Below are positions 1-28,918 of a stretch of DNA of 64,000 bases, piece after piece. The notes beneath the pieces were generated by a model that saw nothing but the letters and a program-made list of their open reading frames with translations, was not told the origin of the DNA and searched no databases. A program made the translations under genes and the position numbers. How positions within the stretch are numbered: position 1 is the first letter of the stretch; the number at the start of each line of letters is the position of its first letter. Source of the stretch: Phaeosaccion multiseriatum (lineage: Eukaryota > Protista > Ochrophyta, other classes). Location: NCBI GenBank assembly GCA_965112735.1, contig OZ218964.1, forward strand, positions 1,426,001-1,490,000, written 5' to 3'.

Positions 1-312
1 TTTCGCGTCGTGAACCGCGTCGGCAAGGAATTGATAGTCGAGCATGCGAGGGTGGATGCAAAGCTGGCCCGTGGAGCGCTGGCACCATCGACACCGACAG
101 CACTGCGCCCGTTTACACCGCCTGCTCCGCCGCCTACTTTTGAGAAAACAGCTGAGTGAAGAGAGGAAGGCCGGGCAGCCTTCGCCGTCAGCCGTGTTGA
201 CGTCACACGGGCAGAGAACGTCACGTCAGGCCGAAGCTGCTGACACGTAAAAAGACAAAAGAACAAGAAAAAAATGTACATTGTGTGTGTGGCGAGGGGC
301 TTGTCTCCACTT

Positions 313-3300
313 CTACTTCGTACCAGCGACTCGCATCACCACTCTCCCGGGGTGGTGTTTGTCTTCCCACACTTCGACTCCTGCTCTCTCCTGCAAGTAG
401 GCCAGCACCACAGGCAGCTTTCCTCTACCTGTGAGGACGTTGATCACACTCTCCACCTTCGCTTCTGAGAGCACGTGACGAAGCGCTGCCTTGCCCGTTC
501 CCTTGCCAACCCGTGTCAAGTCCATAAGCCTCCCCGGTACCACCCAGTGTTTGAACATCCCCCACGACACGGCCTCTGCGTACACCTCGTCAGCAGCCTC
601 CTCGTCGCCGCCTTCCTGTAAAGCGTCAATAGTGGCGCTGTAGGTGAGTGTGTTGGGAACGAGTCCTTCAGCCTTCATTTCCCTGAAGAGCCCCAACGCC
701 TCCACGTGTTGGCCGGCCTTGGCGCATGCATCAATGGCGGTGTTGAAGGTCCATACACCCGGAGGGGGTCCTTCGTCCTTCATCTCCCTCAACAAACCCA
801 ATGCCTGTACGTGTTTACCAGCCTTGGCGCATGCATCAACGGCGGTGGTGTAGGTCCATACATCCGGAGCGGGTCCTCCTTCCTTCATCTCCCTCAACAA
901 ACCCAACGCCTCCACGTGTTGACCAGCCTTGGCGCATGCGTTCATAGCAGCGTTGTAGCTCTTTACATCCGGAGCGGGTCCTCCTTCCTTCATCTCCCTC
1001 AACAAACCCAATGCATCCACGTGTTGGCCGGCCTTGGCGCATGCGTGCATAGCAGCGTTGTAGGTCCATACATCCGGAGCGGGTCCTTCGTCCTTCATCT
1101 CCCTCAACAACCCCAACGCCTCCACGCGTTCACCAGCCTTGGCGCATGCATCAATGGCGGTGGTGTAGGTCCATACATCCGGAGCGAGTCCTTCTTCCTT
1201 CATCTCCCTCAACAAACTCAACGCCTCCACGTGTTGACCAGCCTTGGCGCATGCATTAATAGCAGTGTTGTAGCTCCTTACATCCGGAGCGGGTTCTTCT
1301 TCCTTCATCTCCCTCAACAAACCCAACGCCTTCACGTGTTGACCAGCCTTGGCGCATGCGTGAATAGCAGCGTTGTAGCTCCTTACATCCGGAGCGGGTC
1401 CTCCTTCCTTCATCTCCCTCAACAAACCCAACGCCTCCACGTGTTGACCAGCCTTGGCGCATGCGTTAATAGCAGCGTTGTAGCTCCTTACATTCGGAGC
1501 GGGTCCTCCTTCCTTCATCTCCCTCAACAAACCCAACGCCTGTACGTGTTTACCAGCCTTGGCGCATGCATCAACGGCGGCGGTGTAGGTCCTTACACCC
1601 GGAGCGGGTCCTTCGTCCTTCATCTCCCTCAACAAACCCAACGCCTGTACGTGTTTACCAGCCTTGGCGCATGCATCAATGGCGGCGGTGTAGCTCCATA
1701 CACCCGGAGCGGGTCCTCCTTCCTTCATCTCCCTCAGCAAACCCAACGCCTCCACGTGTTGGCCGGCCTTGGCGCATGCATCAATGGCGGTGTTGTAGCT
1801 CCATACATCCGGAGCGGGTCCTCCTTCCTTCATCTCCCTCAACAAGCCCAATGCATCCACGTGTTGACCAGCCTTGGCGCATGCGTTCATAGCAGCGCTG
1901 TAGCTCCTTACATCCGGAGCGGGTCCTCCTTCCTTCATCTCCCTCAACAAACCCAACGCCTGTACGTGTTGGCCGGCCTTGGCGCATGCATCAATGGCGG
2001 TGTTGTAGCTCCATACATCCGGTGCGGGTCCTTCTTCCTTCATCTCCCTCAACAAACTCAACGCCTCCACGTGTTGACCAGCGTTGGCGCATGCGTTAAT
2101 AGCAGCGTTGTAGTTCCATACACCCGGAGCGGGTCCTCCTTCCTTCATCTCCCTCAACAAACCCAACGCCTTCACGTGTTGACCAGCCTTGGCGCATGCG
2201 TGAATAGCAGCGTTGTAGCTCTTTACATTCGGAGCGGGTCCTCCTTCCTTCATCTCCCTCAACAAACCCAACGCCTCCACGTGTTGGCCGGCCTTGGCGC
2301 ATGCATCAATGGCGGTGTTGTAGCTCCATACATCCGGTGCGGGTCCTTCTTCCTTCATCTCCCTCAACAAACTCAACGCCTCCACGTGTTGACCAGCGTT
2401 GGCGCATGCGTTAATAGCAGCGTTGTAGCTCCTTACATTCGGAGCGGGTCCTCCTTCCTTCATCTCCCTCAACAAACCCAACGCCTTCACGTGTTGACCA
2501 GCCTTGGCGCATGCGTGAATAGCAGCGTTGTAGCTCTTTACATTCGGAGCGGGTCCTCCTTCCTTCATCTCCCTCAACAAACCCAACGCCTCCACGTGTT
2601 GGCCGGCCTTGGCGCATACACCAATGGCGATGGTGTAGCTCGTTACGTTCGGAGCAGGTCCTTCGTCCTTCATCTCCCTCAACAAACCCAACGCCTCCAC
2701 GTGTCGACCAGCCTTGGCGCATGCGTTAATAGCAGCGTTGTAGCTCCTTACATTCGGAGCGGGTCCCTCCTTCTTCATACTCTTCAGCAGCTCCAGAGGT
2801 TTGTCGTACTCCCCGCTCTTGGTGCAGGCATCCATTACAATAGTACAGTGGTATGCATCGGGTATCACGCCTTCCCCTTCCATGCCCCTCAGCAGCTCCA
2901 AAGCTTTATCCGATCTCCTCGACGCGACACAGAGACGCAAGGCCGCAGAGTACAGGTACATGTCCAGGACGATGTCTCCTGCCAGCACCTCATCCCACAG
3001 GTCCCATGCCGCGTCCAACCATCCTGCCCGACTGCACGCCTCGATGGCGGCGGCGAAGTTGCCGGCATCGGCCTCCAAGCCATACTCGGGCACTCTTTCC
3101 AGCAGCCGCAGCGCTTCTTCAGGCTCGCCAGCTCTACCCACAGCGGACATTACGACGCTCAATTGTTGATTATTCAGCGGAAGCCCTTGTGCCTGCATGT
3201 CCTTCAGAAGCTGCAGTGCCTGGTCTGCCCTCCCCCCGAAGCCACACGCCACAATCGCTGCCGAATAGGTCCGCGAGTCCGGCTGCAATCCCGCGACAGG

Positions 3301-3885
3301 CATCTCCCGAAGGAGACCCATAGCTTCATCGTATCTCCGAGCCCGGCCACAGGCGTCAATGGCGGCGTTGTAGTGGGCAACGTGTGGTACGAACGCTCCG
3401 TGCTTCTGCGTCTCGATCTCCCTCAGCAATCCAAGCGTCTCTTCCCATCGGCCGCAGTGGCCGAAAGACTCCATGACTGCGTCGAGAAGAGGCGCATCAA
3501 TGGGCAGCGGCGACCGCACCGCCGCCTCCCACTCGCCGCGCACTCTCTCCCAGTCCTTGACCTCCCGTGCGGCCTCCAAACGCTCCAGTGTCGCGAGCCA
3601 CAACGAGGGCGCCGGGAGCCCCTCCTCATCTTTAGGAGGGGGAATATTACTTGTTGAGAAACAAGCCCCCTCACCTGTACTGCTCGACCCGAGAGATCCA
3701 ACCCACGCGCTTGACAAACACGGTGGGGATCCGGGGCGAAAGGTTGCCAGATACGCTGGACTAACACCACAGGCAGGGGCTGAGACTGTGCCAGACGGAG
3801 CATCTCTTCCACCAGGAGCTCTCCTCCGCCTCCCGTTTATGTGCCTCCTTCTCCCGCTTCTGCTGCTGCTGCACACTCTCCTCAT
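313..3885 (-). CDS. P-class pentatricopeptide repeat protein (~28 PPR motifs) with C-terminal SMR-like domain; probable organelle (mitochondrial-type) presequence
   Basis: Intronless ORF; first ATG at 3885 (MRRVCSSSRSGRRR..., Arg/Ser-rich, few acidic residues). About 7 divergent 35-aa PPR motifs, then 20 near-identical ones (VxSYNAAIxACAKAGQHVEALGLLREMKEGGPAP[DNG]). The C-terminus MDLTR...VLTGRG...HPGRV matches SMR LDLH/TGxG/GR landmarks. Confidence 0.93.
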   Translation of the reverse strand: MRRVCSSSRSGRRRHINGRRRRAPGGRDAPSGTVSAPACGVSPAYLATFRPGSPPCLSSAWVGSLGSSSTGEGACFSTSNIPPPKDEEGLPAPSLWLATLERLEAAREVKDWERVRGEWEAAVRSPLPIDAPLLDAVMESFGHCGRWEETLGLLREIETQKHGAFVPHVAHYNAAIDACGRARRYDEAMGLLREMPVAGLQPDSRTYSAAIVACGFGGRADQALQLLKDMQAQGLPLNNQQLSVVMSAVGRAGEPEEALRLLERVPEYGLEADAGNFAAAIEACSRAGWLDAAWDLWDEVLAGDIVLDMYLYSAALRLCVASRRSDKALELLRGMEGEGVIPDAYHCTIVMDACTKSGEYDKPLELLKSMKKEGPAPNVRSYNAAINACAKAGRHVEALGLLREMKDEGPAPNVTSYTIAIGVCAKAGQHVEALGLLREMKEGGPAPNVKSYNAAIHACAKAGQHVKALGLLREMKEGGPAPNVRSYNAAINACANAGQHVEALSLLREMKEEGPAPDVWSYNTAIDACAKAGQHVEALGLLREMKEGGPAPNVKSYNAAIHACAKAGQHVKALGLLREMKEGGPAPGVWNYNAAINACANAGQHVEALSLLREMKEEGPAPDVWSYNTAIDACAKAGQHVQALGLLREMKEGGPAPDVRSYSAAMNACAKAGQHVDALGLLREMKEGGPAPDVWSYNTAIDACAKAGQHVEALGLLREMKEGGPAPGVWSYTAAIDACAKAGKHVQALGLLREMKDEGPAPGVRTYTAAVDACAKAGKHVQALGLLREMKEGGPAPNVRSYNAAINACAKAGQHVEALGLLREMKEGGPAPDVRSYNAAIHACAKAGQHVKALGLLREMKEEEPAPDVRSYNTAINACAKAGQHVEALSLLREMKEEGLAPDVWTYTTAIDACAKAGERVEALGLLREMKDEGPAPDVWTYNAAMHACAKAGQHVDALGLLREMKEGGPAPDVKSYNAAMNACAKAGQHVEALGLLREMKEGGPAPDVWTYTTAVDACAKAGKHVQALGLLREMKDEGPPPGVWTFNTAIDACAKAGQHVEALGLFREMKAEGLVPNTLTYSATIDALQEGGDEEAADEVYAEAVSWGMFKHWVVPGRLMDLTRVGKGTGKAALRHVLSEAKVESVINVLTGRGKLPVVLAYLQERAGVEVWEDKHHPGRVVMRVAGTK
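652..2751 (-). repeat. Coding minisatellite: 20 x 105-bp tandem repeats (PPR array)
   Basis: Exact 105-bp period, e.g. gccttggcgcatgc and tccttcatctccctcaacaa recur every 105 nt with no indels. Confidence 0.97.
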
Positions 3886-4620
3886 TATAGAGGGAAAGAG
3901 GAAGCAAGCAACCAAGCGAGCGAGTCGAATGAAAAGATAGGCGTCATATGCCTCACAGATGGCCGCGGAGTACCAACACGTATTTTCTGTGTGTATGTGT
4001 GGATTGCGCGCACATGCGTGGTAGACAGCGATCGAGTGCGCGCGTTAGAGCCTTGCATTGGTGTCGAGATCCGGAGCCAGCCGGTCAACGCTCTGTGAGG
4101 GGCTGCCGGAGGTCCGGAAATGTGTGTGTGTGTGTGTTTTTAATTTTTGCCTTGTAAAAAAATTAATTTATACCCCCCCCCTTCTCGTTAACCAATCCTC
4201 ACTCTAATTGTGTACACATCCACGGCCCCCATATGCCTCCCTGCCTCCCTCCCTCTCTTCCTGCCTCTCATGTTCATCTTCATCCTCCTCCTCCTCCTGC
4301 TGCTGCTGCTACTGTGCTACTGATGCTGCTCCTGCCGCTCTCCCGAGTAAAGGAAGGGACCCACCCACCCACTGTGTCTCTCCATTGGGATGTCTCTCTC
4401 TAAGAGTAGCTGCAGTTTCAGTTTCAGTCTATTGACTCGACCAGACATGACCCCTATATACTCCTCCTTCCGCTCCGCCACTCTCCGTCCCCCAACTCTC
4501 TCAAAACCCTCAGGAGTGAGTGGACTGTGACTGAGTGTGAGAGTTTGTGAAGAAGGGGGGGAAGCAATTGCCGAGACAGAAGAGCTGCAATTGCCGAGAC
4601 AGAAGAGTTGCAAGCGCCGC

Positions 4621-7600
4621 TCACCACTGTTGGTTGGACGGCTGTTGTCCCCCTTGTTGCGTCCCTTGCGTGGAAAAAAACTGTTGCTGCATCATCCCCT
4701 GCTGCTGCCCTCCCATCCCCTGCTGTGCCATCATCTGCTGAGGCGGATTAGGCGGGGCAGCAGGCCGCGTGGCCGAAGTGGCCATAATCGGGGCGGCTCC
4801 GGGCGGAGCTGTGGCCATGGAGCCGTTAAACCCCCCTCCGCCAAACATCTGTGCCTGCCCCTGCCCCTGTCCAGCCCCCTGCTGCTGACTTATTGGCTGG
4901 GCCCCGAAATTGCTCGCCATCGCCCCCCCGCCTCCGCCCATTGCCGTGTTCATCATTCCCCCGGTGTTCATTCCGCCATTCATTCCCCCGGCGTTTATTC
5001 CGCCATTCATTCCGCCGGTGCTCATTCCGCCCATGGCAGACATGCCGTTCATCGAGGTCATGGGCATAGACATCTGTGGGGAGGACAGAGGAGGGGGGGG
5101 GGGGGGTGAGAGAAGAGAAGAGAAGAGACGAGGCGAGAAGACAAGATGAAAAAAAGTTGGTTTCAGAAAAGAGAGGAAGAACAAGAGAGAATAGTGTTGG
5201 TGTGTGGTGTGGAGCACTTGAGTGGGGACATGAGGGAGGGAGGAGGGGAGGCATGTGGGCAGGCAGACAACACACAAACGTTGATGTGCCGAGTGCTCTG
5301 CCGATTCCTGTCGCACACACGCACACACACACACACGCACGCACACACACGAACCTGTGGCTGCTGTGCTTGCTGCTGCTGATACGCTGACAGGGGGGGC
5401 TGATGCGTCTGAAAGGCCTGCTGCTGTGGCGGTTGCTGCTGTGGCTGGGAGATGCTCATGTTTGTGGCGAAGATACTCGCAAGGTCGTTACTCAGCAGAT
5501 CATTGCCCCCACCGAAAGGCTGCTTGGGCGGTTGGTTCGTCTTGGCTGCTGCCTCGTCCTCATCGTCAGATTCGTCAAAAGCCAGTAAGTCCACGGGAGC
5601 CTTCCCCTTCCCCTTTCCCTTCCCCTTCCCCTTGCTGCTACCGCTACTGCTGCTGCTGCTGCTGCTGGAGCTCCTACCAGCCGCTGTAGATCCATTGAGT
5701 GCCCTCCCCTGCTTACGAGGGTTGAAACAAAGGCGAGAACATCAGAGAACACCATTTGCGGCGGGTGAGGGAGTCAGTCAGTAAGTCAGTAAGTCAGCAA
5801 GTAAGTGAGTGAGTAAGTTGTATAGCCCCCCCACTGCCTTCCCCCTTCCACCCCCATAAGCTAGAAGGGGCCAATTATACTCTGCCTCATCCTTGCTCAG
5901 CAACCCGGGAGGGCTCCGTCTCACCTTGTTGGCAGGCTGCTTCATACTGCCGCTGCTGCTGCTGCTGCTACTGCTACTACTGCTGCTGCTGCCACTCACA
6001 CTGCTGTTAGTGCTTGAACTACTACTGCTGCTACTGCTGCCGCTCCCCTTCTTCCCCACCGCCCCCGGTGCACTCCCCAGCGTCTGCTTGCCGCTCCTCA
6101 GCTCCTTCACGTACTCCAACGCCGAGAGCCACTTGGTCTTTTCGGTTACAGAAAGCGCCATGACCACCATCGACCCCGGCATGCCTGTCGTGGCGGTGGG
6201 CCCCCCTACAGAGCGGTACTCCACCCTGAACATCCTCGAGCTCCAATCCACGCCGCACAGCTCCTTGGGCAGCTCCTGCAACACGTCCATTCGGCACCGC
6301 TCGTCGATGTACACCACCTGGGGTTTTTGTTTTGTTTTGTTCGTTGTTTTAATGTGTGCGTGCGTGCGTGCGTGTGTTTGTTGTTCGTGCGTGTGTGTGT
6401 GTTTATGTCACAGCACACACCAGCAGGAGGGAAGGGAAGAGGGAGGAAGGAAGGAGAAGGTGGTCAGCAAAAAAGCACAAAAGCACAAGAGAGTCGGTCA
6501 GTCAAAGCCAATCAATCAGTTAGTTAGTCAGTCAGTCAGTCAGTCAGTCAGTCAATCACTCAGACAGTCAGGCAATCAATCAGTCAGTCAGTTAGGTGAT
6601 CAGTCGGACCCCTCTCCCTCCTCACCTCCATGGTCTCCTTGTGCTTGAACTTGCCCTTCCACAGCGTCTTTCCGCGGATGAGCACGTCCGTAAAGAGGTA
6701 AAAGTACCCGTCCGAGATGGGCGGGTCTTTGGCGGGGTTGATGACTGCCAGGGGGCCCTGTTGTGTGTAGTATTATTATTACCACGAACAGTCACAGTGA
6801 GTGAGTGAGTGAGTGGGTGAGTGGGTGAGTGAACGAGTGAGTGAGTGAGTGAGTGAGTGAGTGAGTGAGTGAGTGAGTGAGCGCACTGAGTAAGTCAATG
6901 TGCATGTCCTTCAGATCGGCGCACGTACCTTGTGTATGAGTTTCCGCTGACCGCTCTTGATGGACAGATTCAGCACCTTGGCCCAAGACTGCTTCTCCGC
7001 CAGAGAGGTTGCCGAGAGGAGGTAGATGTGCCCAGCAGTCACCACGCGGAAGGGGAACAGGCCGCTCTTGCCGTCCATAGTACCAACGTCCTCGACCTAC
7101 AGGGCATAGTGTAATGCAAGATACACGGCACACAGCGCACGTTACATGGAAGAGGGGGAGGAAGAGGAGGAGGAGGAGGAGGAGGAGGAGGAGAAGGAGG
7201 AGGAGGAGGAGGAGAAGGAGGAGGAGGAGGAGGAGGAGGAGGAGGAGGAGGAGGAGGAGGAGGAGGAGAAGAAGGAGGAGAAGCGGCAGCAGCAGCAGCG
7301 GCGACGGCGGTTGTGGTGTTTGTCAAATGCAATGCCGTAAAGTAGATCATCCACAACGTTTCTCTTCTCTCCACAGTGCGTGCCAACTGTCACTCATTGA
7401 AGGACCAACTGGCCCAACTGACCTGCAGCACGGGGTCTAGCCTTCTGAAGACGTACTTCCTGCCCAGGAGGGCGGGACGCGCCTGCATGAGCCCGTCGCT
7501 GAAGAGCACGAAGAAATCCTTACGGTCCTTCATCTTTCCCAGCTTCAGCAGCACGCCCTCCTGCAGCGGGAGAGGGGGGAAGAGGAGAGGGGAGAGGTAG

Positions 7601-27827: not shown

Positions 27828-28790
27828 AGCGCGTGTGCTTGCTCCAGCTTGCCCGCCCTCCCTGAACGGAGGCATCACCCTCTGCGCGCCCCTGCCTCTC
27901 GCTTCTACACTCGCAGCGCCCCTCACCCCCCCCCTTCTCGCTCGCCCCAAATGCATATGTCGATCCCCCCATCCCCCCCCCGGGCCCCCGAACCCACACG
28001 CACGCACGCACGCACACATGCACGCAGGAGCTAAGCCTGGCTTGCACCGAAAGAGACACGTGTCGCAGCAGCCTCGATGCAATGACGGAGGCGTGTGGCC
28101 AGGCGCAGGGGAAGGCAGTGGAGCTTGTGGAGCAGCGGCGGGTGCTTGTCAACGAAGTCAAGGTGCTGAGGCGGCAAAGCGAGGGGCTGGTCAAGGATCT
28201 GCAGCAGAAGGACGAGGTGGTGCAGCGCCTGGCTGGGGCCTATGAGTCGCTCGAGCACAAGATTGTTGCCCCGCAGCCACAACAGTTGGTGATTCAGCAG
28301 AAGCAGCAGCAGCAGCAGCAGCAGGAAGAGGAGGAAGAAGAGGAGGAGGAGGAGGAGGAGCAGAAGGAGGAGGAGGAGAAGGAGGAGGAGGAGGAGCGGC
28401 GGAGGCAGGCTGCAACCTCTACCGCAGCCGAAGGTGGGGATACATCGTCTGTGTCCGAGCCTGACCACTCTTCGTCTCCATTGCTCGCCGAGAGTGCTCA
28501 CCAGGACGAGGGAGGAAGATCCAGTGAAGAGATCAGTGGGTATGCGGGCGACGATGGCGTCGATGGCGATGACTCGTTGCGCCTTCTTTCTCGCCCGGAG
28601 GAAGAGGCACCCAGCAGCCCCCTCTCTGCCACTTGGAGCTTCCGAAATTTAAACCTCTTTGGGAGCGGTGTTCGAAAGAACTCGTTGCTTGGAGGGTCGG
28701 CTGGGGTTGGGGTCGCGGCTGGTGCGCATGTTGGTGCACCAGCGGAGGAGAGGAGTCGCCGGCAGGCGAGGGAGGAGGAGGAGGAGGAGA

Positions 28791-28828
<38 letters not shown>

Positions 28829-28918
28829 AGTGAGGTGCTCGTCTTGTACAGGCGGGGCGTGGAAGGCCCCTACAGCGCCGAGCCTGTGGCCAGGAGCATG
28901 CCCACACAGTGTCGGTAA
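25834..28918 (+). CDS. PH-domain and coiled-coil protein (multi-exon)
   Basis: CRGSLLLRE|EWKRHCCSLVPRTLLYIYD..PTGVLDI..W (PH-like strands and terminal Trp helix), then heptad-rich segments incl. RRVLVNEVKVLRRQ. 3' end tentative. Confidence 0.7.

What the first reader, a model, noticed from the sequence alone, without database searches (positions are those of the whole stretch)
652..2751. TALE/PRDM9-like PPR array: 20 near-identical repeats varying at RNA-code positions, fused to SMR
Seen: unlike the divergent N-terminal PPRs, these 20 repeats share an almost invariant DNA scaffold. Variable sites include position 2 (R/W/K/T), 5 (N/T/S) and 35 (D/N/G), plus 3, 6, 8, 9, 13, 16, 19, 22 and 29-30. 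The 5/35 pairs N-to-C are NN, TN, NN, ND, NN, NG, ND, ND, SD, NG, TG, TN, ND, ND, ND, TD, ND, ND, TG, NN. Known: PPR positions 2, 5 and 35 specify the base (TN=A, TD/SD=G, ND=U, NN=C/U). The code predicts about 5'-YAYUY(Y)UUG(Y)(R)AUUUGUU(R)Y-3', with brackets marking non-standard G35 pairs. Inference: a natural recombination-reprogrammable RNA binder or nuclease, probably mitochondrial, shuffling modules as in genetic-conflict systems (restorer-of-fertility PPRs, antiviral or selfish-RNA targeting). It is also a ready-made designer-PPR scaffold.
Basis: partly seen in the sequence, partly recalled or inferred. Interest (0 to 1): 0.88.

Follow-up and report, generated by a model that had tools for sequence, protein, structure and literature searches.

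The report
Algal PPR protein with 20 near-identical repeats
This is a real, intact gene of an alga-like eukaryote for an RNA-binding repeat (PPR) protein whose 20 central repeats are near copies that differ most often at the residues that choose the RNA base; its small "nuclease-type" tail has lost a catalytic residue, so it is an unusual variant of a known protein type, not a shown re-aimable nuclease.

Summary
One uninterrupted frame (window 313-3915, minus strand; first Met at 3885) encodes about 7 divergent PPR motifs, then 20 tandem 35-residue motifs (652-2751; 105-bp period, no indels, 88% mean DNA and 79% protein identity), one degenerate motif and a 77-residue tail. Positions 35 and 2 change most often between closest repeats, whatever phase the unit is cut in. 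A three-repeat block was recently duplicated.

The "SMR" tail gets no Pfam hit. Profile comparison (97% probability) and a predicted fold (Z 11.2 to a solved Smr domain) support a reduced Smr. Its DxH motif reads D-L-T, so the catalytic histidine is absent.

Best reading: an organellar, probably mitochondrial, P-class PPR RNA binder. It belongs to a multi-copy family that this scan has already noted many times elsewhere in the same genome. Its array evolves by unequal crossing-over, much as plant restorer-of-fertility-like PPRs do. Cutting, re-aiming and any conflict role are not shown.

Short-read unitigs confirm the gene's unique junctions but not the repeat number. Similar uniform PPR arrays with Smr-like tails exist in a Symbiodinium protein and in bacterial genomes.

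Verdict: new variant of a known kind, moderate interest.

The parts
313..3885 (-). Coding sequence of the PPR/Smr-like protein: first Met codon at 3885, stop at 313-315, 1190 residues, single exon as read.
   Evidence: Open frame 313-3915 without stops. The first Met is at codon 11 of that frame. Pfam PPR families E 5e-229.
3487..3885 (-). N-terminal region before the PPR motifs. The first 30 residues hold 11 Arg and one acidic residue, with no hydrophobic signal peptide, so it looks like a mitochondrial presequence.
   Evidence: Composition count. Localisation is inferred, not tested.
2752..3486 (-). About 7 divergent PPR motifs. Their 5/35 pairs are M/H, N/D, S/N, S/D, A/D, S/D and T/N.
   Evidence: Pfam PPR E 4e-35 on this part. 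Mean pairwise identity 25% in protein and 43% in DNA.
652..2751 (-). Array of 20 near-identical 35-residue PPR motifs (105-bp period).
   Evidence: TRF 20.1 copies, 88% matches, no indels. Motif table. Identity statistics. Code-position enrichment.
1915..2617 (-). Recent tandem duplication of a three-motif (315-bp) block. Motifs 3-5 and 6-8 of the array are 98.5% identical over 388 nt at a lag of 315 nt.
   Evidence: Lag analysis. The motif-by-motif comparison shows 7 differing bases in 6 codons. Five codon changes are nonsynonymous (35 N>G, 2 R>W, 3 S>N, 19 E>Q, 35 N>D) and one is synonymous.
547..651 (-). One degenerate terminal PPR-like motif, 26% identical to the array consensus.
316..546 (-). 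Reduced Smr-like domain of 77 residues. D-L-T replaces DxH, TGRG is kept, and there are two loop deletions.
   Evidence: No Pfam Smr hit. hhalign against 9 PPR-linked Smr domains gives probability 97.4%, E 1.5e-11. Alignment. [quoted passage not shown] Best structural match is the Smr domain of T. thermophilus MutS2 (2zqe), Z 11.2, rmsd 1.6 over 71 residues. Foldseek's top rows include the PPR-Smr subunit of the plastid RNA polymerase and the NEDD4BP2 Smr.
706..3657 (+). Antisense open frame of 983 residues. It is a by-product of the repeat: a stop-free 105-bp unit is copied 20 times. It is not taken as a gene.
   Evidence: Listed. Its translation is a periodic low-complexity string. It was not scanned on its own, and one search covered the minus-strand protein.

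Best explanation
A single-exon nuclear gene of a GC-rich, intron-bearing alga, probably an ochrophyte stramenopile, encodes a P-class PPR protein of about 28 motifs. It most likely enters an organelle, probably the mitochondrion. There it would bind a long single-stranded RNA stretch, one base per motif, acting as a passive binder that protects, blocks or marks the RNA.

The 20 central motifs predict roughly 5'-YAYUYYUUGYRAUUUGUURY-3', and the 7 N-terminal motifs add about ?UAGGGA upstream.

The C-terminal domain is a reduced Smr that has lost the catalytic histidine. It more likely serves in RNA, ribosome or partner binding than in cutting.

[quoted passage not shown] Meanwhile the base-choosing residues 35, 2 and 5 are exchanged among a small functional alphabet.

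Shown: gene structure, repeat statistics, Smr homology and fold, loss of His, and multi-copy status. Inferred: RNA binding, the target sequence, the organelle, lack of nuclease activity and the recombination mechanism.
For: - Intact 1200-codon frame.
- Very strong PPR matches with an exact 35-residue period and no indels.
- At eight codons (7, 14, 15, 18, 20, 23, 26, 34) the DNA varies but the amino acid never does. Pairwise pN/pS is 0.42 outside the code positions. The scaffold is therefore under constraint and the gene is not decaying.
- Position 5 uses only N, T and S, and position 35 only D, N and G. These are all residues with known base preferences.
- Positions 35 and 2 are the most recurrently changed in every phase.
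- A three-motif block is duplicated at 98.5% identity, and repeats fall into DNA subtypes interleaved along the array.
- Summed unitig depth over the gene is about 3-100 times the flanking single-copy depth, with variant contigs. This indicates many paralogues at >=95% identity, as the scan's earlier notes on this genome also say.
- The tail is homologous to Smr and has the Smr fold, but carries D-L-T.
- The DxH histidine is required for metal-independent catalysis, and DLR-type MutS2 does not cleave mRNA (PMC10897456).
- The N-terminus is Arg-rich without a signal peptide.
Against: - No RNA run holds the gene, so expression is unknown.
- The 5' end and start codon are not confirmed, and an upstream exon carrying a signal peptide cannot be excluded.
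- Repeat number and order are not confirmed by spanning reads.
- The tree-style count gives 71 nonsynonymous to 24 synonymous codon changes, close to a neutral ratio overall. Constraint on part of the scaffold is therefore weak.
- Some plant PPR-SMR proteins with non-canonical motifs still act on RNA, so loss of His does not prove lack of nuclease activity.
- The Smr fold model was built from an alignment of Smr domains. The single-sequence model was uninformative, with pLDDT 43.
Confidence: 0.6

Rival explanations
1. One reading: the gene is part of a restorer-of-fertility-like, conflict-driven repertoire. Recombination and positive selection keep re-aiming the arrays at new organellar, selfish or viral RNAs, and the Smr tail or a recruited nuclease destroys the target.
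For: - Changes are concentrated at positions 35, 2 and 5.
- pN/pS is 1.9 at these codons against 0.42 elsewhere.
- In the youngest duplicate block, 3 of 5 amino-acid changes hit code positions, P 0.006.
- The gene is intronless, has a long array of consensus-like motifs and many paralogues. These are the hallmarks described for plant RFL genes (PMC5075784).
Against: - The code positions are also the structurally freest positions, so purifying selection on the scaffold plus drift gives the same enrichment.
- The pN/pS of 1.9 rests on very few synonymous sites.
- The Smr lacks the catalytic His.
- No target, no polymorphism data and no expression data were obtained.
- No other PPR gene lies in this 64-kb window, so this copy is not in a local cluster.
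Confidence: 0.2
2. A young, largely unselected copy of an amplifying repeat-rich gene family. It has an open frame today but no specific function, and the array grows by replication slippage or unequal exchange.
For: - There are many near-identical paralogues.
- The overall nonsynonymous to synonymous ratio on the repeat tree is near neutral.
- The Smr tail is degenerate.
- No RNA evidence was found.
Against: - A 3.6-kb frame without a stop or indel.
- Eight scaffold codons show only synonymous variation.
- Positions 5 and 35 use only a restricted, code-competent alphabet.
Confidence: 0.12
3. The repeat number or order is an assembly artefact, for example paralogous arrays merged or a block over-expanded.
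For: - No contig spans the array.
- The gene region is shredded into 80-300-bp unitigs with multi-copy depth.
- There are a few low-depth joints that skip 209-948 bases.
- The 703-bp duplicated block is 98.5% self-identical.
Against: - Unique junction unitigs (51-340, 589-721, 716-795, 2794-2886, 3319-3430, 3795-3981) match without differences at single-copy depth in runs of two studies.
- The frame is intact and the period exact.
- The skipping joints have sides of only 20-27 bases and depths far below single copy, as expected from paralogues.
Confidence: 0.08

Closest known systems
PPR-SMR proteins of plants and heterokont algae (SOT1, GUN1, pTAC2/PAP2, PPR53, ATP4/SVR7; reviewed in PMC3858433)
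   Same: - P-class PPR tract followed by a C-terminal Smr domain.
- TGxG motif kept.
- The best structural matches include the PPR-Smr subunit of the plastid RNA polymerase.
- PPR-SMRs are already reported in brown algae and diatoms.
   Different: - Known members have divergent motifs, few paralogues and a full-length Smr that Pfam detects.
- Here 20 motifs are near copies and the family is multi-copy.
- The Smr is shortened by two deletions, has D-L-T for DxH and fails Pfam.
Restorer-of-fertility-like (RFL) PPR genes of angiosperms (PMC5075784)
   Same: - Intronless P-class genes with 15-20 motifs that match the consensus unusually well.
- Excess change at base-recognising residues.
- Motif duplication and deletion by unequal crossing-over.
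- Many similar paralogues.
   Different: - RFLs are a land-plant clade without a C-terminal domain, and their motifs are far less uniform.
- This gene is algal and its nearest relatives are stramenopile and dinoflagellate PPRs at 30-40% identity.
- It carries an Smr-like tail.
- No male-sterility-type conflict is known in such algae.
Synthetic designer or consensus PPR proteins (dPPR, cPPR; PMC4837458, PMC6468296)
   Same: One fixed 35-residue scaffold is repeated, with specificity set by positions 5 and 35 (and 2). The code pairs in use (ND, NN, TN, TD, SD, NG) have measured base preferences.
   Different: - This protein is natural.
- The scaffold still varies at 17 other positions.
- TG pairs are of unknown preference.
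- It has flanking divergent motifs and an Smr-like tail.
Uniform PPR arrays with Smr-like tails in public but uncharacterised proteins: Symbiodinium sp. Y106 (P0231), Roseateles noduli OWQ47593.1 and its two tandem paralogues (P0169; L001), and an IS-rich bacterial-looking contig (P0150)
   Same: 6-10 near-identical motifs (35-residue self-identity 0.83-0.89) that differ mainly at positions 5 and 35, followed by an LDLH-type Smr start. In Roseateles there are tandem paralogues with different code strings.
   Different: - Only 37-39% identical to the window's tail region.
- Shorter arrays and different scaffolds.
- Two of the three are in bacterial genomes.
- They keep the DxH histidine.
TAL effector and PRDM9 zinc-finger arrays
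   Same: Tandem near-identical modules that each read one base or base triplet, with recurrent change at the reading residues and evolution by unequal exchange.
   Different: - Unrelated folds that read DNA, not RNA.
- In TALEs almost all variation sits at the two reading residues. Here only about 31% of inferred changes do.

Membership tests
P-class PPR protein | Tandem 35-residue helical-hairpin motifs matching the PPR profiles. | tested here: met
   PF13041 E 5e-229 (23 stretches) and PF01535 E 8e-212.
P-class PPR protein | Only canonical 35-residue motifs, with no L/S variants and no E/DYW extension. | tested here: met
   Exact 105-bp period with 0% indels. No DYW or E domain among the Pfam hits.
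PPR-SMR | C-terminal Smr domain recognised by the curated family model (PF01713). | tested here: not met
   No Smr hit for the tail even at E <= 10.
PPR-SMR | [quoted passage not shown] | tested here: met
   hhalign probability 97.4%, E 1.5e-11 against 9 PPR-linked Smr domains. AF2 topology with pLDDT 77. 2zqe Smr Z 11.2 and 3fau Z 9.3. The model used an Smr-rich alignment, so the fold test is not independent of the homology test.
PPR-SMR | DxH (LDLH) motif with the catalytic histidine. | tested here: not met
   The aligned motif reads M-D-L-T. The closest tail, P0213, reads V-D-L-L. The role of His is taken from PMC10897456.
PPR-SMR | TGxG motif. | tested here: met
   T-G-R-G-K aligned to the TGxGK column. 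The 9-residue loop that follows is deleted.
PPR-SMR | RNA endonuclease activity and organellar location. | not testable with these tools
   Only the N-terminal composition could be examined: 11 Arg in 30 residues and no signal peptide.
Restorer-of-fertility-like PPR | Membership of the angiosperm RFL clade. | tested here: not met
   The nearest proteins are stramenopile and dinoflagellate PPRs at 30-41% identity. Plant hits are weaker and not RFL-named.
Restorer-of-fertility-like PPR | Intronless, 15-20 or more consensus-like P motifs, with excess change at base-recognising residues and motif gain by unequal exchange. | tested here: met
   The features are as listed in PMC5075784.
Restorer-of-fertility-like PPR | Paralogues clustered at the locus. 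| tested here: not met
   No other PPR motif or repeat copy in the 64-kb window. The family is multi-copy elsewhere.
TALE-like array | Variation essentially confined to the specificity residues. | tested here: not met
   20 of 35 positions vary. 22 of 71 inferred amino-acid changes fall at positions 2, 5 and 35. Synonymous divergence between repeats is pS 0.185.

The most novel reading that the evidence does not exclude
This gene would be one member of a recombination-driven repertoire of organelle-RNA-targeting PPR proteins that arose in a stramenopile alga independently of angiosperm restorer-like genes. New RNA specificities would be made by toggling residues 35, 2 and 5 and by shuffling whole motifs on a fixed scaffold. 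The same solution, a uniform PPR array with an Smr-type tail and often tandem paralogues, recurs in a Symbiodinium protein and in bacterial genomes. That would make it a general natural way of re-aiming PPR proteins.
Probability: 0.2. Interest if true: 0.75.

Novelty: new variant of a known kind. Interest (0 to 1): 0.5.

Why it matters
PPR proteins are the main sequence-specific RNA binders of organelles and the basis of designer RNA-binding tools. Those tools were built from an artificial consensus because natural motifs are very divergent.

A natural protein with 20 near-identical motifs is therefore useful. Its most changeable residues are the base-choosing ones, and it uses only code-competent amino acids there. 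It offers a ready test bed for the PPR code on a native scaffold, including the poorly known G35 pairs.

If the paralogues prove to be diversifying, it would be evidence that RFL-type nuclear-organelle dynamics exist outside land plants.

The loss of the Smr histidine in this copy also gives a natural contrast for asking what the Smr tail does in PPR-SMR proteins.

Tried and rejected
- Exact look-up of the protein and two neighbours in the 15-billion collection found nothing. The genome's proteins are not in that collection under these models.
- Searches with the N-terminal 400 residues and with the array plus tail gave only generic PPR relatives, at most 52% identity over 43% of the query.
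- A scan of JGI metagenome contigs found no relative.
- Taxon identification through a presumed AS3MT frame (28082-28915) gave no hit. The stramenopile assignment rests only on the taxa of the best PPR hits (Cladosiphon, Nannochloropsis, Scytosiphon, Ectocarpus, Chrysoparadoxa) and on the scan's earlier notes.
- Pfam and a PDB sequence search do not detect the Smr tail.
- The single-sequence AlphaFold model of the tail was uninformative, with pLDDT 43.
- The exhaustive search with the tail was dominated by the 45 PPR residues I left at the start of the query. Only a few hits extend into the tail.
- I considered that the toggling at positions 35 and 2 might be an artefact of where the repeat frame is cut, because recombinant chimeras would look different at the unit's ends. 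I rejected this: the two positions stay on top in all 35 phases.
- Skipping joints in the unitigs were considered as evidence for shorter alleles. I rejected them: their sides are 20-27 bases and their depth is far below single copy.
- A scan of public collections for the predicted 20-mer was not run. With 9 two-fold degenerate positions it would give many chance matches in collections of that size.
- Four literature searches found no description of natural near-identical PPR arrays in algae. The library lacks most subscription journals, so this is not proof of absence.
Full report
**What is there**

The first 4 kb of the window hold one uninterrupted frame on the minus strand, 313-3915. The first Met codon is at 3885, giving 1190 residues.

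Tandem Repeats Finder reports a 105-bp unit in 20.1 copies at 672-2778, with 88% matches and no indels. Read in frame, the protein consists of these parts:
- a 133-residue N-terminal region
- about 7 divergent PPR motifs (window 2752-3486)
- one degenerate motif (547-651)
- a 77-residue tail (316-546)

Pfam scores the protein at E 5e-229 for PPR_2 and E 8e-212 for PPR. The window holds no other PPR motif or copy of the repeat.

An antisense frame of 983 residues (706-3657) is a by-product of copying a stop-free unit.

**Check of the observation**

Array motifs are on average 79% identical in protein and 88% in DNA. The N-terminal motifs are 25% and 43% identical. The 35-residue self-identity of the best 350 residues is 0.83, against a median of 0.21 and a maximum of 0.54 in 147 relatives from the first two searches.

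So the array is real in the sequence and far more uniform than ordinary PPR tracts. However, "almost invariant scaffold" is too strong:
- 20 of the 35 positions vary at least once
- synonymous divergence between repeats is 0.185
- the repeats fall into four or five DNA subtypes interleaved along the array

**Is the variation at the RNA-reading positions?**

By entropy, the most variable positions are 9, 19, 2, 35, 6, 16 and 5. Positions 2, 5 and 35 carry 24.7% of all pairwise amino-acid differences (exact P 0.0044 over all triplets of positions).

Counting changes along a minimum spanning tree of the repeats is a better measure of recurrent change. That count gives 71 nonsynonymous and 24 synonymous codon changes:
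- position 35 changes on 10 of 19 edges
- position 2 changes on 8 edges
- position 5 changes on 4 edges

This is 22 of 71 changes at three positions (P 6e-8, or 5e-4 if only the 20 variable positions are allowed).

Recombinant chimeras could mimic this at the ends of an arbitrarily cut unit. I therefore repeated the count in all 35 phases. Positions 35 and 2 are the two most often changed in every phase.

Position 5 uses only N, T and S, and position 35 only D, N and G. The pairs ND, NN, TN, TD, SD and NG have measured base preferences, and NG binds C and U like NN (PMC6468296). The preference of TG is not known to me.

At eight scaffold codons (7, 14, 15, 18, 20, 23, 26, 34) the DNA varies but the amino acid never does.

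Together this means a constrained scaffold with freely exchanged, code-competent reading residues. It does not by itself prove positive selection, because these are also the least structurally constrained positions. The pN/pS of 1.9 at the three codons rests on very few synonymous sites.

**How the array changes**

At a lag of three motifs, a 388-nt stretch is 98.5% identical (window 1915-2617). This is a recent tandem duplication of a 315-bp block.

Motif by motif, the two copies differ at 7 bases in 6 codons. Five codon changes alter the protein: 35 N>G (two bases), 2 R>W, 3 S>N, 19 E>Q and 35 N>D. One is synonymous. Three of the five amino-acid changes hit code positions (P 0.006).

[quoted passage not shown] The same processes are described for plant restorer-of-fertility-like PPR genes (PMC5075784).

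**The tail**

Pfam finds no Smr domain, even at E <= 10, and a sequence search of the PDB finds nothing.

An exhaustive search with the last 124 residues found a few proteins aligned through the tail. In P0235, P0248, P0189 and P0007 the aligned part is a Pfam Smr domain.

A profile of nine PPR-linked Smr domains, built without the query, matches the tail at 97.4% probability and E 1.5e-11 over 79 columns.

[quoted passage not shown] Its best structural matches are:
- Smr of T. thermophilus MutS2 (Z 11.2, rmsd 1.6, 71 residues)
- human Smr (Z 9.3)
- the PPR-Smr subunit of the plastid RNA polymerase (Z 8.8)
- SmrB (Z 8.5) (Foldseek agrees)

The single-sequence model was uninformative, so the fold evidence is not independent of the alignment.

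The domain is reduced. The LDLH motif reads M-D-L-T, TGRGK is kept, and the loops before the second strand and after TGxGK are deleted. The closest tail, P0213 from a Logan contig (33% identity, E 3e-12), shares the deletions and also lacks the histidine.

In SmrB-type domains the DxH histidine is needed for catalysis. DLR-type MutS2 binds ribosomes but does not cut mRNA, and loss of this histidine recurs in the family (PMC10897456).

I therefore accept "fused to an Smr-like domain" but regard a nuclease role for this copy as unlikely.

**Address and target**

After the first Met, 11 of 30 residues are Arg with a single acidic residue, and there is no hydrophobic signal peptide. In an alga with a secondary plastid, plastid import needs a signal peptide. 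A mitochondrial address is therefore the better guess, provided the start codon is right.

The N-terminal motifs add roughly ?UAGGGA upstream.

**Reads**

Five runs from two studies of one coded organism hold the stretch, and none is on record as RNA. Only short unitigs were available.

Unique junction pieces (51-340, 589-721, 716-795, 2794-2886, 3319-3430, 3795-3981) match without differences at single-copy depth in both studies. The gene body is shredded into 80-300-bp pieces whose summed depth is about 3-100 times that of the flanks, with variant contigs also in the N-terminal part.

This shows many paralogues at 95% identity or more. It leaves the repeat number and order unverified.

**Context in this scan and in public data**

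The scan has met this family many times on other pieces of the same genome, and earlier follow-ups reached similar conclusions. This copy has the longest array among the eight notes shown, which mention 11-16 repeats. It also stands alone rather than in a cluster.

No close relative exists in the protein collections or JGI metagenome contigs. The best hits are ochrophyte and dinoflagellate PPRs.

Among the tail-search hits I found other uniform PPR arrays with Smr-like tails:
- a Symbiodinium protein
- three tandem paralogues in the bacterium Roseateles noduli
- a pair on an IS-rich, bacterial-looking contig

So the architecture is wider than this genome. My literature searches found no description of it.

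**Verdict**

This is a real, probably functional P-class PPR gene with a reduced Smr tail.

In evolution it works like an RFL gene and in architecture like a designer PPR, but it is a member of neither. It sits at the edge of the PPR-SMR group: it has Smr homology and TGxG, but lacks the Pfam match and the DxH histidine.

I class it as a new variant of a known kind, of moderate interest.

Noticed in passing
L001:6001-11075 (Roseateles noduli NIOE01000004.1): Three tandem bacterial genes (569, 500 and 579 residues; GC 69%) each encode 6-8 near-identical PPR motifs that differ mainly at positions 5 and 35. Each also has an LDLH-type Smr-like tail. They are flanked by ordinary bacterial genes. 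This is a bacterial counterpart of the algal family.
   Followed up: partly
P0150 (contig of 207,729 bases, sample ERZ25068966; no DNA held): A 546-residue protein with 8 almost identical PPR motifs (self-identity 0.89) that vary at positions 5, 33 and 35, plus an Smr-like tail. It is present twice within 7 kb among IS630 and DDE transposase genes, on a contig that looks bacterial.
   Followed up: partly
L003:8001-12293 (JGI 3300045961 contig Ga0484968_0000011): A 1430-residue PPR protein, the best hit of the tail search, lies in a prokaryote-like gene neighbourhood. Nearby are a sigma-54 activator and an E2-CBASS-type and ThiF gene pair.
   Followed up: no
P0231 (Symbiodinium sp. Y106, EukProt): Ten near-identical PPR motifs (self-identity 0.88) followed by a WLDLHDHS Smr start and a further long C-terminal region. 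Uniform PPR arrays therefore also occur in this Symbiodinium protein.
   Followed up: no
window 1-168 (+): The end of a convergent gene stops at 166-168, about 145 bases from the PPR gene's stop. Another reader of the scan called it an Rnl2 RNA-ligase-like fragment. The 52 residues inside this window are too few to test.
   Followed up: no
window 2906-3560: Unitigs with 1-4 differences and depths above single copy also lie on the divergent N-terminal PPR part. Some paralogues therefore resemble this gene at 95% or more over its whole length, not only in the array.
   Followed up: partly
window 4621-5594 (-) and 5314-5350: Upstream of the PPR gene lie frames rich in Gln, Gly and Met with 15-27-bp tandem repeats, and a CA-dinucleotide run. 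This is probably a low-complexity protein gene on the same strand.
   Followed up: no
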